Position numbers and translations under genes: made by a program | Part shown: positions 7,703 to 9,924 of the stretch, one piece after another | Numbering within the stretch: the stretch's first letter is position 1 | How the letters are laid out: each line of letters begins with the position of its first letter | Assembly (NCBI GenBank): GCA_002269645.1 | Contig: NIVC01002206.1 | Span: 1-64,000 of the forward strand | From: Macrostomum lignano | Taxonomy: Eukaryota | DNA length: 64,000 bases | Direction: 5' to 3' | The notes under the pieces: generated by a model | The model's input: only the letters and a program-made list of their open reading frames with translations | Database searches by the model: none | Told to the model about the DNA's origin: nothing

Positions 7703-9924
7703 ATGGCTCCAATCCGCATGCTGCCGCTGCTTCTGGCGACCCTGTCGGCTCTGACTTGGACAGCCTCTGCCGCTGCCTACCGGGAGCAGCGCTACCAGTG
7801 CCCGCAGCTGAGCACAGAGAACTGCACCGCCGACAATGGCCTGGCCTTCTTCGACGGCTGCACAACTGTCGCCTGCATCGGCTGGCGCTCGGCCGTGAGG
7901 GAGCCGACTTACTGCCGGCCGGCTGTCACCGCCGCGGAGCTGAGTCGCTGCCGTCAGCTCAACAACCGGCTTGAAATCATTCAGAGCCGGGCGCAGGGCG
8001 CCGCTTTACCGGACGTCCTGGTCAACTGTCCGCAGTTCTCTGGCGTTGATATCTGTTCCACCGCCGATCAGTTCTTCACCTTCAACGACGGCTGCAATGT
8101 GCACCTGTGCGACGGCTCCGGCGGCACGTTCGAGCGAAGTCGGAACCAATGCCCGGAGGCCCGCACGCCGGAGCAACTATTCTTCTGCAAGGTCACCTTC
8201 AACTCAGTGGTTCGGGCCCACGCCACGCGGCACGCCTGCCGAGCTCAGGTGAGAGTTTACAGTTCTGGCTTCCAGACCGGAACTCCCCAAATTTTCCAAA
8301 ACTTCTATATAGAACTTCTATTCGAAATGCAATTAGATCAAATATGCTAATTGACCAAGATTGATTCTGAAGCTTCTCTAGATATTGTGTTCTCTCAAAT
8401 CGGATTTCTCAAAATGGAAGCATGCTAAGGCTTGATTTCTTTGATAGAGGGGTTGTTCAAGTTTAGTTCGTCTTAAATCCTTTACCTAATCATTTGAGCA
8501 AACTTCTTCAGTTTTCTTTAAACTTTTCTAACAGCCTTCAGTCCCAGAAAAAAATGTAAAGACGATTTCTTTCTCTCAAACCACACTCTGCTGATTGTAA
8601 TCTTACACTGGTCATGTAAAGGCATCACAAATCTTTCGCTGACACAGCTGAATAAAAAGGTAACTTAATACTCGTTTCAGCTACTGACAAATTTGCGCAT
8701 TAACTACTGAAATCTAGCTGAAATCACCGCTTCCTGGAAAGCTTCCCATAGACGCATTCTTATTTGATTCTGCGAGCAGAATTGCTTTTGTCTATGGCAA
8801 AATCTCCGTTAGGTCTAATGCATCATAGGTGCGGGATTGAAATATATTTTTAGAAATTGAAGACAACAAAAATAAAGAGCAGGGTTGATTTTGTCTATGG
8901 TTGAACTTTATGTTCTATGATTAGGATAGAATAGAAGGATAGAAGGATTAGGATAGAAATTCATGAACGCTATAACGAGTGCGTCATTGGCAAAAGCACG
9001 AAAGCGCTTCTCAAAATCTCAAAAGTTTTTGAGTAGCCCTTGTGGTTTAGCTGGGTGCCACTAAGTAGTCTACTAATGTATATAAGATCTATGGTATTAT
9101 GTATTGTTCCCTTCTGTCTATGATTCAATGCAAGGATTTCCCGGCAGCAAATTTATTAGTTTAAAGCCAAAAGCACCAACTGTTAATAGCCGGCAAACAA
9201 TAAAATTCACTCGATTTGCCTTTAGTCCTCCTGCTTTAATTGCTTAGTCCTGAAATCTCTTTCGATCACCGAACCCTCCACTACTCAGGCCGAGAACGCT
9301 GAGCGCATCTGCGAGGTCACGTGGCCCGGCTACCAGTTCAGTGACGCCTGTTACGGCGGCAATCACTTCATCTGCGGCCCGGGGAAAAACCTGCTGACCC
9401 GGCCGCCGACAGGCCAGTGCCCGCTCGAGAGCGCCTCCGAGAGCATCAAGTGCCGCGAGGTAGCCGCCGAGGTTGCCGAACTGCTAGCTCCGGATCGCGG
9501 CTACACCTGCCCGGAGCTGCATCGCTCCTCGGTGTGCACAGCTGAGAATAGCGGCTTCGTCTATAACGACGGCTGCAACCTGGTGCTGTGCGAAGGCCCC
9601 AGCGCCGGCCTCAGCGAGGGCCGCACCTGCAAGCTGCCGCTCAAAGAGTCCAACCCAGCTGGCAGCGAGTTCTGCCGCCGGCGGGCCGCCGAGGTGCGCC
9701 GCGAATTGGCCGCCGGGCGCCGACACAACGGCCCCTGCGTCACCGCTGCGGAGGCCTGCCCCGGCCCGGCGGCCGAGGGAGTCAGCTACTTCGACGGCTG
9801 CAACTATTGCACCTGTCTGGGCGCGGCCAGGTCGAAGTGCACCCGGCGGAAGTGCCTCGGCTTCTTCGGCACCGATGCGGAGTTCTCCGCCTACTGCGCC
9901 ACCGTTGCTAGGCGATTGGACTGA
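7703..9924 (+). CDS. Secreted Cys-rich protein, 393 aa, five ~70-aa pacifastin-related repeats (last one near-canonical, predicted P1 Arg)
   Basis: Exons 7703-8248 and 9289-9924 (phase 0, GTGAGA / CTCAG). Signal peptide MAPIRMLPLLLATLSALTWTASA. Repeated D-G-C-N motif; C-terminal C-x13-CNYCTC-LG-AARSK-CTRRKC. High GC3. Confidence 0.85.

What the first reader, a model, noticed from the sequence alone, without database searches (positions are those of the whole stretch)
7703..9924. Five-repeat pacifastin-related secreted protein; four repeats have lost exactly one disulfide pair
Seen: a signal peptide then five ~70-aa units. Unit 5 (core 9757-9855) reads C-x13-C-N-Y-C-T-C-L-G-AARSK-C-T-R-R-K-C. 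Established: the pacifastin (MEROPS I19) consensus is C-x9-12-C-N-x-C-x-C-x2-3-G-x3-6-C-T-x3-C with bonds C1-C4, C2-C6, C3-C5, and P1 is the residue after CT (here Arg, trypsin-type). Seen: units 1, 2 and 4 keep C1, C2 (DGC), C4 and C6 at the same spacing (e.g. DGCNLVLC-x12-C) but lack both C3 and C5, one complete bonded pair; unit 3 shows the same pattern with looser spacing. All units add an outer Cys pair and a helical-looking tail. Paired loss supports true fold homology. A dibasic GRR precedes unit 5. Inference: a multi-domain inhibitor with one canonical and four remodelled domains. Pacifastins are mainly described from arthropods, so this architecture in a probable flatworm may be undescribed.
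Basis: partly seen in the sequence, partly recalled or inferred. Interest (0 to 1): 0.78.

Follow-up and report, generated by a model that had tools for sequence, protein, structure and literature searches.

The report
Flatworm pacifastin-like five-repeat secreted protein
This two-exon Macrostomum lignano gene encodes a secreted protein of five pacifastin-like repeats: the last keeps the full serine-protease-inhibitor scaffold with an arginine at the reactive site, and the other four have lost one disulfide bond, a variant of a known inhibitor family that I did not find described.

Summary
Exons 7703-8248 and 9289-9924 (+) splice GT/AG into a 393-aa protein identical to M. lignano PAA59976.1 (Mlig009177.g3). 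It has a signal peptide and five ~70-aa units with 6, 6, 6, 6 and 8 Cys.

Unit 5 reads C-x13-CNYCTC-LGAARSK-CTRRKC. Pfam Pacifastin_I scores 22.1 bits (E 1.3e-4), below the 27.9-bit cut-off. Its AlphaFold model (pLDDT 93.7) has only pacifastin inhibitors as its top five PDB matches (rmsd 1.6-3.1 Å).

Units 1-4 keep C1, C2, C4 and C6 in register and lack C3 and C5. A profile of such degenerate units matches a canonical pacifastin profile (hhalign 95.7%, E 8.6e-9). Fourteen of 27 hit Pfam Pacifastin_I individually. Unit 4, modelled from degenerate units only, best matches SGCI (rmsd 1.4 Å).

Across about 140 family units, C3 and C5 are both present (100) or both absent (32). Every unit adds an invariant outer Cys pair and a C-terminal helix.

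All units are under purifying selection (ω 0.17-0.37). Paralogues are already auto-named "Pacifastin domain-containing", and flatworm pacifastins were noted in 2023 and 2026. The disulfide-deleted, helix-extended unit looks undescribed. Inhibitory activity is inferred, not shown.

The parts
7703..8248 (+). Exon 1 (codons 1-182): signal peptide, unit 1, unit 2 and the first 6 residues of unit 3, including its outer Cys179.
   Evidence: The product is identical to PAA59976.1.
8249..9288 (+). Phase-0 intron of 1040 nt (GT...AG, AT-rich). It lies between the outer Cys (C179) and C1 (C190) of unit 3.
   Evidence: The intronless transcript contig L002 reads across the junction.
9289..9924 (+). Exon 2 (codons 183-393 plus the TGA stop at 9922-9924): rest of unit 3, unit 4 and unit 5.
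7703..7777 (+). Probable signal peptide (about residues 1-25, MAPIRMLPLLLATLSALTWTASAAA).
   Evidence: Hydrophobic core followed by the small-residue motif ASA. No dedicated predictor was run.
7790..7993 (+). Unit 1 (residues 30-97): extended pacifastin-like unit with 6 Cys (Ca33, C1 41, C2 53, C4 58, C6 71, Cb83). C3 and C5 are absent.
   Evidence: 34.0 bits against an external degenerate-unit profile, shuffle maximum 8.3. 11.4 bits against the canonical profile, shuffle maximum 8.1.
8018..8230 (+). Unit 2 (residues 106-176): 6 Cys (109, 118, 131, 136, 150, 162). C3 and C5 are absent.
   Evidence: 43.8 bits. 10.2 bits against the canonical profile, shuffle maximum 7.4.
8231..9498 (+). Unit 3 (residues 177-252, interrupted by the intron): the most divergent unit, 6 Cys (179, 190, 203, 211, 226, 237). 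It has DAC in place of DGC and a 3-residue insertion between C2 and C4.
   Evidence: 23.2 bits against the external degenerate-unit profile, shuffle maximum 5.6. It is not distinguishable from shuffles against the canonical profile: 4.1 against a maximum of 4.5.
9499..9720 (+). Unit 4 (residues 253-326): 6 Cys (256, 265, 278, 283, 296, 311). C3 and C5 are absent, and the C-terminal helix is long.
   Evidence: 60.9 bits. AF2 pLDDT is 89.8 from an alignment of degenerate units only. The Foldseek top hit is SGCI 1kgm, rmsd 1.4 Å over 28 columns.
9721..9921 (+). Unit 5 (residues 327-393): 8 Cys, made of the outer pair (332, 385) and the full pacifastin set C1-C6 (339, 353, 356, 358, 366, 371). It carries the tail motif FFGTDAEF-x3-C, which is conserved in the terminal units of relatives.
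   Evidence: Pfam Pacifastin_I 22.1 bits, E 1.3e-4. 31.2 bits against the canonical profile. AF2 pLDDT 93.7, with pacifastins as the top five PDB matches.
9838..9855 (+). Predicted reactive-site loop of unit 5: C366-T367-R368(P1)-R369(P1')-K370-C371.
   Evidence: Position rule C5-Xaa-P1-P1'-Xaa-C6 from PMC13388995. P1 is Arg or Lys in the terminal units of P0002, P0004, P0005 and P0006.

Best explanation
**What it is.** The gene encodes a secreted, disulfide-rich protein built from five tandem copies of an 'extended' pacifastin-like domain. Each copy has these parts:
- an N-terminal segment carrying an outer Cys (Ca);
- the three-stranded pacifastin β-core;
- a C-terminal α-helix carrying a second outer Cys (Cb), which by parity pairs with Ca.

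**Unit 5.** It retains all six core Cys, the Asn after C2, the Gly after C4, and a C5-T-R-R-K-C6 loop.

**Most likely function.** Unit 5 is a standard-mechanism (canonical, substrate-like) inhibitor of trypsin-like serine proteases, presenting Arg368 as P1.

**Units 1-4.** They derive from the same 8-Cys unit by loss of the C3-C5 disulfide, the bond that ties the P3 side of the reactive loop to the sheet. They keep the fold, held by C1-C4, C2-C6 and Ca-Cb, and are under purifying selection. In this protein they no longer carry a conserved P2-P1 motif. Most likely they act as non-inhibitory or non-canonical binding or spacer modules that present or target the single inhibitory head.

**Shown:** gene structure, repeats, homology, predicted fold, paired Cys loss, selective constraint.

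**Inferred:** secretion, disulfide connectivity, protease inhibition and its specificity, and the role of units 1-4.
For: **Gene model and identity.**

**Unit 5 is pacifastin-like.**
- Pfam Pacifastin_I E 1.3e-4.
- The only PDB sequence hit is 7snd, a pacifastin-related peptide.
- 31.2 bits against a profile of 57 canonical domains; the best shuffle scores 5.9.
- AF2 pLDDT 93.7 with strands at 24-26, 31-36 and 39-42 plus a helix at 54-66.
- The Foldseek PDB top five are all pacifastins: 2xtt_A, 2vu8_I, 1wo9, 1kj0, 2f91_B. Rmsd is 1.6-3.1 Å, TM normalised to the target 0.46-0.62, identity 31-37%.

**The family.**
- A 10-unit profile finds 37 proteins among 1.84 billion. They include M. lignano paralogues and canonical multi-domain pacifastins at E 1e-20 to 1e-8.
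- The paralogues are UniProt-named 'Pacifastin domain-containing protein'.

**Degenerate units.**
- hhalign against the canonical profile gives 95.7%, E 8.6e-9, aligning C2, C4 and C6 with C3 opposite V and C5 opposite S/T. Reversed and shuffled controls give E >= 0.005.
- 14 of 27 hit Pfam Pacifastin_I at E <= 0.01, and no other family.
- The unit 4 model, built from degenerate units only, has pLDDT 89.8 and its best PDB match is SGCI, rmsd 1.4 Å.

**Paired loss of C3 and C5.**
- 100 units have both and 32 have neither; no genuine singles were found.
- There is a second, independent route to loss. P0026 is 50% identical to the 8-Cys P0022. It has C3 replaced by Lys and a 4-residue deletion that removes one of C5/C6.

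**Outer pair.** Six Cys columns are invariant across 46 extended units.

**Constraint.** ω is 0.17-0.37 in every unit and all 32 Cys are conserved against P0002.
Against: - Unit 5 is below Pfam's gathering score (22.1 against 27.9 bits), and its C1-C2 loop is x13, outside the classical 9-12.
- Foldseek E-values are 1-8 and not significant by themselves. The aligned core is only about 28 residues. The argument rests on the identity of the top hits.
- The window's own units 1-4 give no Pfam Pacifastin_I hit. They are only marginally above shuffles against the canonical profile, and unit 3 is not above them at all. Their assignment rests on family-level profiles.
- There are no expression, localisation or biochemical data. 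No paper mentions the gene or its paralogues.
- dS is close to saturation (about 0.95), so the ω values are rough.
Confidence: 0.72

Rival explanations
1. All five units are active canonical inhibitors. The degenerate units would still present a reactive loop between the former C5 position and C6, braced by the extra Ca-Cb disulfide and the helix instead of by C3-C5. The protein would then be a polyvalent inhibitor with several specificities.
For: - The degenerate units of the paralogues P0004, P0005, P0006, P0008, P0016 and P0021 conserve T/S-T-[L/F/M] exactly where canonical domains have C5-T-P1.
- The AF2 model of unit 4 keeps the third strand.
- All units are under purifying selection.
Against: - In this protein the P3-P2-P1 positions equivalent to C5-T-P1 read R-E-P (u1), R-S-R (u2), P-P-T (u3) and S-E-G (u4).
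- They are not conserved in P0002: at P1, u1 changes P to Q and u2 changes R to N.
- By established knowledge of canonical inhibitors, loss of the disulfide anchoring P3 is expected to loosen the loop.
Confidence: 0.15
2. The protein is not a protease inhibitor at all. It would be an extracellular structural or adhesive or ligand-binding protein that merely uses the pacifastin scaffold, in the sense of the 'matrix-embedded ancestral' pacifastin-like domains proposed by PMC13388995.
For: - Four of the five units lack a canonical reactive loop.
- PMC13388995 argues that non-arthropod pacifastin-like domains often sit in matrix-associated multidomain proteins with low processing potential.
- No functional data exist.
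Against: - The terminal unit keeps C5-T-(R/K)-x-x-C6 with a basic P1 in the window protein and in P0002, P0004, P0005 and P0006. This is what is expected for a maintained trypsin-directed reactive site.
- No other domain types (adhesive or matrix) are present in the protein.
Confidence: 0.1
3. The repeats are chitin-binding type-2 (CBM14 / peritrophin-A) domains, as the UniRef name of the g1/g2 copies suggests, or VWC-type repeats.
For: - UniRef100_A0A1I8GZT9 is named 'Chitin-binding type-2 domain-containing protein'.
- The spacing of five of the six Cys loosely resembles the ChtBD2 pattern (from my own knowledge).
- One family member gave a weak VWF-like Pfam hit, E 0.0022.
Against: - No Pfam CBM_14 or VWC hit appears even at E <= 10 for the protein or any unit.
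- Pacifastin_I is the only family hit by 14 of 27 degenerate units and 26 of 46 extended units.
- Foldseek finds no chitin-binding or VWC structure for either model.
- hhalign to the pacifastin profile gives 95.7%.
Confidence: 0.03

Closest known systems
Pacifastin family of serine-protease inhibitors (MEROPS I19; Pfam PF05375 Pacifastin_I), for example locust SGCI/SGTI (PDB 1kgm, 1kj0, 2f91, 2xtt) and PMP-C/PMP-D2
   Same: - Unit 5 has the six-Cys pattern, CN after C2, Gly after C4 and the C5-T-P1-P1'-x-C6 loop.
- Its predicted three-stranded core superposes on solved pacifastins at 1.6-1.9 Å for the best three matches.
- The protein is a multi-domain secreted precursor.
- The basic P1 resembles trypsin-directed members such as SGTI and PMP-D2.
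   Different: - Each unit is about 70 aa, not about 35.
- Each has an extra N-terminal segment, a C-terminal α-helix and an additional invariant outer Cys pair.
- Four of the five units lack the C3-C5 disulfide.
- The unit 5 C1-C2 loop is x13.
- Unit 5 scores below Pfam's gathering threshold.
- Dibasic inter-domain processing sites are not conserved.
'Ancestral-architecture' pacifastin-like domains of non-arthropods (Rodriguez-Aguilar et al., Sci Rep 2026, PMC13388995)
   Same: - The occurrence is non-arthropod (lophotrochozoan).
- The C1-C2 loop is at least 13 residues in unit 5.
- P1 is basic.
- Predicted proteolytic processing between domains is low.
- Sequence is divergent and sits near or below HMM thresholds.
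   Different: - That study required conservation of all six Cys, so units like 1-4 are excluded by its design.
- It does not mention a C-terminal helix: 'helix' occurs 0 times in its text.
- 'Four-cysteine' also occurs 0 times there.
- No Macrostomum accession was found in the two supplementary files held as text.
M. lignano paralogues Mlig003398 (P0005), Mlig001679 (P0006) and Mlig004023 (P0008), plus an unnamed relative, P0004
   Same: - P0004, P0005 and P0006 have the same architecture: a signal peptide, 3-4 degenerate 6-Cys units and one terminal 8-Cys unit with C-T-R-x-x-C and an F-x-T-x-E-E-F tail.
- P0008 has two degenerate units and no 8-Cys terminal unit.
   Different: - Identity to the window units is only about 25-35%.
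- Their degenerate units keep a T-T-[L/F/M] motif at the reactive-loop position, which the window protein has lost.
- P0005 and P0006 are auto-named 'Pacifastin domain-containing protein'. The window protein's copies are named 'Uncharacterized' or 'Chitin-binding type-2'.
Two-unit relatives of unknown metazoan origin (P0011, P0014, P0015, P0028, P0030, P0038)
   Same: - They use the extended unit with the outer Cys pair and helix.
- They have an N-type unit followed by a terminal unit with an FFGT-like tail.
   Different: - Their N-type units still have all 8 Cys, which is the presumed ancestral state.
- They have fewer repeats.
- The source organisms are unknown (metagenome or transcriptome contigs). 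The contig carrying P0028 also carries a metazoan RIC3 gene.

Membership tests
Pacifastin (MEROPS I19 / Pfam PF05375) | Six-Cys signature C1-x9-12-C2-N-x-C3-x-C4-x2-3-G-x3-6-C5-T-x3-C6 | tested here: met
   Unit 5 reads C339-x13-C353-N-Y-C356-T-C358-LG-AARSK-C366-T-RRK-C371. Only the C1-C2 loop, at x13, is one residue beyond the classical range. That length falls in the 13-20 'Ancestral' class of PMC13388995.
Pacifastin (MEROPS I19 / Pfam PF05375) | The same six-Cys signature in units 1-4 | tested here: not met
   C3 and C5 are absent in all four units. C1, C2, C4 and C6 are retained, with C2-x4-C4 in u1, u2 and u4 and x7 in u3. These are homologous derivatives, not canonical members.
Pacifastin (MEROPS I19 / Pfam PF05375) | Score at or above the Pfam Pacifastin_I gathering threshold (27.9 bits) | tested here: not met
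   Unit 5 scores 22.1 bits, E 1.3e-4. Units 1-4 give no hit at E <= 10. Related units do better: 26 of 46 extended units hit at E <= 0.01 (best 4.2e-8), and 14 of 27 degenerate units do so (best 9.9e-6).
Pacifastin (MEROPS I19 / Pfam PF05375) | Three-stranded antiparallel β-sheet fold superposable on solved pacifastins | tested here: met
   - Unit 5: AF2 pLDDT 93.7. All top five PDB matches are pacifastins, rmsd 1.6-3.1 Å, TM normalised to the target 0.46-0.62.
- Unit 4: AF2 pLDDT 89.8. The top match is SGCI, rmsd 1.4 Å, TM 0.61.
- Caveat: these are predicted models, and the Foldseek E-values of 1-8 are not significant on their own.
Pacifastin (MEROPS I19 / Pfam PF05375) | Disulfide connectivity C1-C4, C2-C6, C3-C5 | tested here: inconclusive
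Indirect support for the C3-C5 pairing comes from co-occurrence: 100 units have both, 32 have neither, and no genuine singles were found.
Pacifastin (MEROPS I19 / Pfam PF05375) | Invariant Asn after C2 and conserved Gly in the C4-C5 loop (PMC13388995) | tested here: met
   - u5 has CN and C-L-G.
- u2 and u4 have CN and C-x-G.
- u1 has CT (CN in the orthologue P0002) and C-I-G.
- u3 has C-YGG-N and C-G-P-G.

Pacifastin (MEROPS I19 / Pfam PF05375) | Canonical inhibition of serine proteases through the P1 residue after C5-T | not testable with these tools
   Sequence shows only C5-T-R368-R369-K-C6. A basic P1 is conserved in the terminal units of P0002, P0004, P0005 and P0006.
Chitin-binding type-2 / CBM14 (peritrophin-A) | Match to the CBM_14 profile and a tachycitin-like fold | tested here: not met
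   No Pfam CBM_14 hit at E <= 10. No chitin-binding structure appears among the Foldseek matches. The UniRef name of the g1/g2 copies is therefore probably a weak profile artefact.
VWC / single-domain VWC repeats | Match to VWC profiles and fold | tested here: not met
   No VWC hit for the protein or its units. One of 46 related units gave a VWF-like hit at E 0.0022. No VWC structures appear in Foldseek.

The most novel reading that the evidence does not exclude
The extended unit (pacifastin core, outer Ca-Cb disulfide and C-terminal helix) defines a distinct, so far unnamed subfamily of the pacifastin superfamily. It occurs in macrostomid flatworms and in other poorly sampled metazoans. Within it, a two-disulfide core lacking C3-C5 has arisen at least twice and been kept under selection. 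These disulfide-deleted modules would have a new function, either non-canonical inhibition or target and matrix binding, rather than being decayed inhibitors.
Probability: 0.35. Interest if true: 0.6.

Novelty: new variant of a known kind. Interest (0 to 1): 0.5.

Why it matters
Pacifastins are a textbook small canonical serine-protease inhibitor scaffold, and the C3-C5 bond is thought to brace the reactive loop. This gene and its relatives offer three things:

1. **A natural experiment.** The same domain exists with and without that bond, side by side in one polypeptide and under purifying selection. That makes the contribution of C3-C5 to fold stability and to inhibition directly testable.
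2. **An unreported elaboration of the fold.** Each unit adds an outer disulfide and a helix.
3. **Concrete flatworm members.** They support the recent claim that pacifastins predate arthropods. They also show that surveys requiring six Cys miss part of the family.

Two practical points follow. The database name 'Chitin-binding type-2 domain-containing protein' for this gene's other copies looks wrong. The protein is also a candidate regulator of extracellular trypsin-like proteases in a regeneration model organism.

Tried and rejected
- **Alignment query to the search for homologous proteins.** Using the 46-unit alignment A2 returned nothing: 117 candidates, none scored.
- **Organism of the P0028 contig.** I searched its RIC3 neighbour and found only unnamed hits. 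The organism remains unknown.
- **Literature searches.** Searches for Mlig009177, for the paralogue identifiers and for the SRR/ERZ/JGI sample accessions found no papers. 'Pacifastin' together with 'Macrostomum' also found none.
- **Supplements of PMC13388995.** The two files held as text contain no Macrostomum or UniProt accession of this family.
- **Full-length PDB sequence search.** It gave only chance-level hits: a tuber agglutinin at E 0.35 and nitric oxide synthase at E about 1.7. I rejected these.
- **Weak Pfam hits.** DUF6970 (E 0.023), Pepsin-I3 (E 0.13) and Pox_T4_N (E 0.054) on single units were not reproduced across the family. I rejected these too.
- **Paralogues in the window.** tblastn found no second copy.
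- **Model coordinates.** They are not exposed in /data, so the disulfide geometry could not be measured.
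Full report
**1. What is in the sequence**

The window is eukaryotic and very rich in tandem repeats.

At 7703 an ATG opens a 546-nt exon that ends at a CAG|GTGAGA donor (8248/8249). 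A CTCAG| acceptor at 9288 is followed by a 636-nt exon ending in TGA at 9922-9924. The two exons join in phase 0 and give a 393-aa product with 32 cysteines.

The product is identical to Macrostomum lignano PAA59976.1 (Mlig009177.g3). It differs at three residues (T175S, I210V, K365Q) from the g1/g2 copies.

A 69%-identical protein, P0002, is encoded by an uninterrupted ORF on a 1318-nt assembled-read contig. That contig is too short to hold an intron of this size, and it reads straight across the junction.

The N-terminus MAPIRMLPLLLATLSALTWTASAAA looks like a signal peptide. No dedicated predictor was available.

**2. The repeats are real**

The cysteines fall into five units with 6, 6, 6, 6 and 8 Cys. 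Spacings between successive Cys are:

| Unit | Ca-C1 | C1-C2 | C2-C4 | C4-C6 | C6-Cb |
|---|---|---|---|---|---|
| u1 | x7 | x11 | x4 | x12 | x11 |
| u2 | x8 | x12 | x4 | x13 | x11 |
| u3 | x10 | x12 | x7 | x14 | x10 |
| u4 | x8 | x12 | x4 | x12 | x14 |
| u5 | x6 | x13 | x4 | x12 | x13 |

Cross-unit tblastn matches reach E 4e-7.

I built a profile of degenerate units taken only from other proteins, leaving out the window protein and its orthologue. Against it the five window units score 34.0, 43.8, 23.2, 60.9 and 30.2 bits. The best of 300 shuffles scores at most 8.3.

Unit 3 is the most divergent. It has DAC instead of DGC and a three-residue insertion between C2 and C4. It is also split by the intron, between its outer Cys and C1.

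**3. Unit 5 is a pacifastin-like domain**

- The core, exactly 9757-9855, reads C-x13-CNYCTC-LGAARSK-CTRRKC.
- Pfam Pacifastin_I is the only meaningful Pfam hit: E 1.3e-4, 22.1 bits, below the 27.9-bit gathering score.
- The only PDB sequence hit is a pacifastin-related peptide, 7snd, at E 0.4.
The best shuffle scores 5.9.
- AlphaFold2 with a 46-unit alignment gives pLDDT 93.7, three β-strands in the pacifastin positions and a C-terminal helix.
- The five best Foldseek matches among 350,542 PDB chains are all pacifastin inhibitors: SGPI-1 2xtt, 2vu8_I, 1wo9, SGTI 1kj0 and 2f91. Over 27-31 aligned columns the rmsd is 1.6-3.1 Å, and 1.6-1.9 Å for the best three. TM normalised to the target is 0.46-0.62 and identity 31-37%.
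- The Foldseek E-values are 2-6 and not significant on their own, as expected for a core of about 28 residues. The evidence is that nothing else in the PDB comes first.
- By the position rule C5-Xaa-P1-P1'-Xaa-C6 (PMC13388995), P1 is Arg368 and P1' is Arg369.

**4. Units 1-4 are the same domain without the C3-C5 pair**

A 10-unit profile searched against 1.84 billion representative proteins found 37 proteins. They fall into three classes of unit:

| Class | Description | Units |
|---|---|---|
| A | extended 8-Cys units (outer pair plus C1-C6) | 19 |
| B | extended 6-Cys units lacking C3 and C5 | 28 |
| C | canonical pacifastin domains of multi-domain proteins, including one from a nemertean | 58 (57 used for the canonical profile, after one family-A terminal unit was dropped) |

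- The class B profile contains no unit with C3 or C5. It aligns to the class C profile with 95.7% probability and E 8.6e-9 over 27 columns.
- That alignment is in register: C2, C4 and C6 are matched, C3 lies opposite Val, and C5 lies opposite Ser/Thr.
- Reversed and column-shuffled controls give E >= 0.005.
- Fourteen of 27 degenerate units hit Pfam Pacifastin_I on their own at E <= 0.01, and no other family. The window's own four units do not. Against the canonical profile they are only marginally above shuffles, and unit 3 is not above them at all.
- Unit 4, modelled with an alignment of degenerate units only, reaches pLDDT 89.8 with the same strand pattern and a long helix. Its best PDB match is SGCI 1kgm, rmsd 1.4 Å over 28 columns, TM 0.61. 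Three further pacifastins (2xtt, 2vu8, 1wo9) follow at ranks 2, 6 and 7 among chance-level hits.

**5. The loss is paired**

Across about 140 units, C3 and C5 are both present in 100 and both absent in 32. The few apparent singles are truncated envelopes or units with unusually long loops. These counts are not independent events.

There is nevertheless a second route to the same outcome. P0026 is 50% identical to the 8-Cys P0022. It has C3 replaced by Lys and a four-residue deletion that removes one of C5/C6.

Relatives of unknown metazoan origin (P0011, P0014, P0015, P0028, P0030, P0038) still have 8 Cys in their N-terminal units. The 8-Cys unit therefore looks ancestral, and the Macrostomum N-terminal units look derived.

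**6. The extension**

All 46 extended units share six invariant Cys columns: Ca, C1, C2, C4, C6 and Cb. With the three canonical bonds assigned, parity leaves Ca-Cb as a fourth bond. It would tie the N-terminal segment to the C-terminal helix.

Terminal units share a tail motif, (F/Y)(F/V)G(T/S)xx(E/Q)(F/L/M)xxxC, in the window protein and in distant relatives. This suggests an old two-part architecture of N-type unit(s) followed by a distinct terminal unit.

**7. Constraint**

Against the P0002 transcript, every unit has ω of 0.17-0.37 and all 32 Cys are conserved. dS is about 0.95, so the values are rough. The degenerate units are maintained, not decaying.

**8. Likely mechanism**

The best-supported reading has three parts.

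1. The protein is secreted, and its C-terminal unit is a standard-mechanism inhibitor of trypsin-like serine proteases with P1 Arg368. A basic P1 is also present in the terminal units of P0002 (Lys) and of P0004, P0005 and P0006 (Arg).
2. The four N-terminal units keep the fold but have lost the bond that anchors the P3 side of the reactive loop.
3. In this protein the P3-P2-P1 positions equivalent to C5-T-P1 read R-E-P, R-S-R, P-P-T and S-E-G. They vary between the two species. I therefore think these units are non-inhibitory or non-canonical modules.

The paralogues behave differently. Their degenerate units conserve T/S-T-[L/F/M] at that position. So the rival that some disulfide-deleted units still inhibit cannot be dismissed for the family as a whole.

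The GRR before unit 5 is a possible processing site, but its Gly is not conserved in P0002.

**9. Comparison with what is known**

- Pacifastins outside arthropods have been known since 2009, in Placozoa and Onychophora (PMC2689174).
- A monogenean flatworm survey lists four MEROPS I19 proteins (PMC10308649).
- A 2026 structural survey extends the family to molluscs, rotifers, fungi and bacteria, with a few Platyhelminthes. It defines an 'Ancestral' class with a C1-C2 loop of 13-20 residues (PMC13388995).
- UniProt already names the paralogues P0005 and P0006 'Pacifastin domain-containing protein'.

So the idea of a pacifastin in a flatworm is not new.

I found no description of three things: the roughly 70-aa extended unit with an outer disulfide and helix, the C3-C5-deleted core, and the architecture of several degenerate units followed by one canonical unit. 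The 2026 survey required all six Cys and never mentions a helix. My literature search was limited to the held library.

The UniRef name 'Chitin-binding type-2 domain-containing protein' for the g1/g2 copies finds no support. There is no CBM_14 hit at E <= 10 and no chitin-binding fold match.

**10. Verdict**

Inhibition is untested, and the claim that it is undescribed in flatworms holds only for the architecture and the disulfide-deleted variant.
- Novelty: a new variant of a known kind.
- Interest: moderate. It is a tidy natural experiment on the role of a disulfide in a canonical inhibitor scaffold, and a correction to a database name. It is not a new category of system.

Noticed in passing
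window 6565-7576: A 22-23-bp tandem array (AAGCCTGCTGGAAAGGGGGAACC, about 44 copies) ends only about 127 bp upstream of the ATG at 7703. Very little unique sequence is left for a promoter or 5' UTR. The array creates long spurious ORFs on both strands.
   Followed up: partly
window 10173-10539: An (ATCT)n microsatellite of about 92 copies begins about 250 bp after the stop codon. The whole window is unusually rich in tandem repeats, with 53 TRF rows, for example (TAGA)449 at 61881-63675 and (TAAC)247 at 50757-51744.
   Followed up: no
window 1828-1900 (-): A tRNA-Lys (anticodon CTT) gene, found by both ARAGORN and Rfam (69.4 bits).
   Followed up: no
window 16278-17312 (-): A long ORF or exon matching Pfam FAP206 (cilia- and flagella-associated protein 206), E 7.7e-36. 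This is a neighbouring gene unrelated to the finding.
   Followed up: partly
window 43487-44050 (+): An ORF or exon matching Pfam Peptidase_M14 (zinc carboxypeptidase), E 2.4e-18. It partly overlaps a 25-bp tandem array at 43877-44455.
   Followed up: partly
window 9835-9837 (codon 365): The gene copies differ at the residue just before C5 of unit 5, on the reactive-loop side. It is Lys in this window (g3) and Gln in g1/g2. The two other differences are T175S and I210V.
   Followed up: partly
P0004, P0005, P0006, P0008, P0016, P0021 (related proteins): The degenerate units of paralogues and relatives conserve T/S-T-[L/F/M] exactly where canonical pacifastins have C5-T-P1. The reactive loop may therefore still be functional there without the C3-C5 bond. 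The window protein has lost this motif.
   Followed up: partly
P0025 (related protein, 194 aa): A Gly/Ala/Asp-rich protein with a lipoprotein-like N-terminus (…AVSGC) carries three canonical pacifastin-like domains and looks bacterial. This fits the claim of bacterial pacifastin-like domains in PMC13388995. Its origin was not checked.
   Followed up: no
P0019 (UniRef100_A0A1I8HYL8, M. lignano): Another M. lignano protein built from the same degenerate units is named 'Thyroglobulin type-1 domain-containing protein' in UniRef. Together with 'Chitin-binding type-2' for Mlig009177 g1/g2, this suggests that automatic names for this family are inconsistent.
   Followed up: no
L003 (ENA ERZ21788738, 10.8-kb contig), 1862-2407 and 6001-6681: The two-unit relative P0028 is encoded as a single 681-nt ORF on a contig that also carries a RIC3-family gene, so the contig comes from an animal. 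Its closest RIC3 relatives are unnamed and the organism is unknown.
   Followed up: partly
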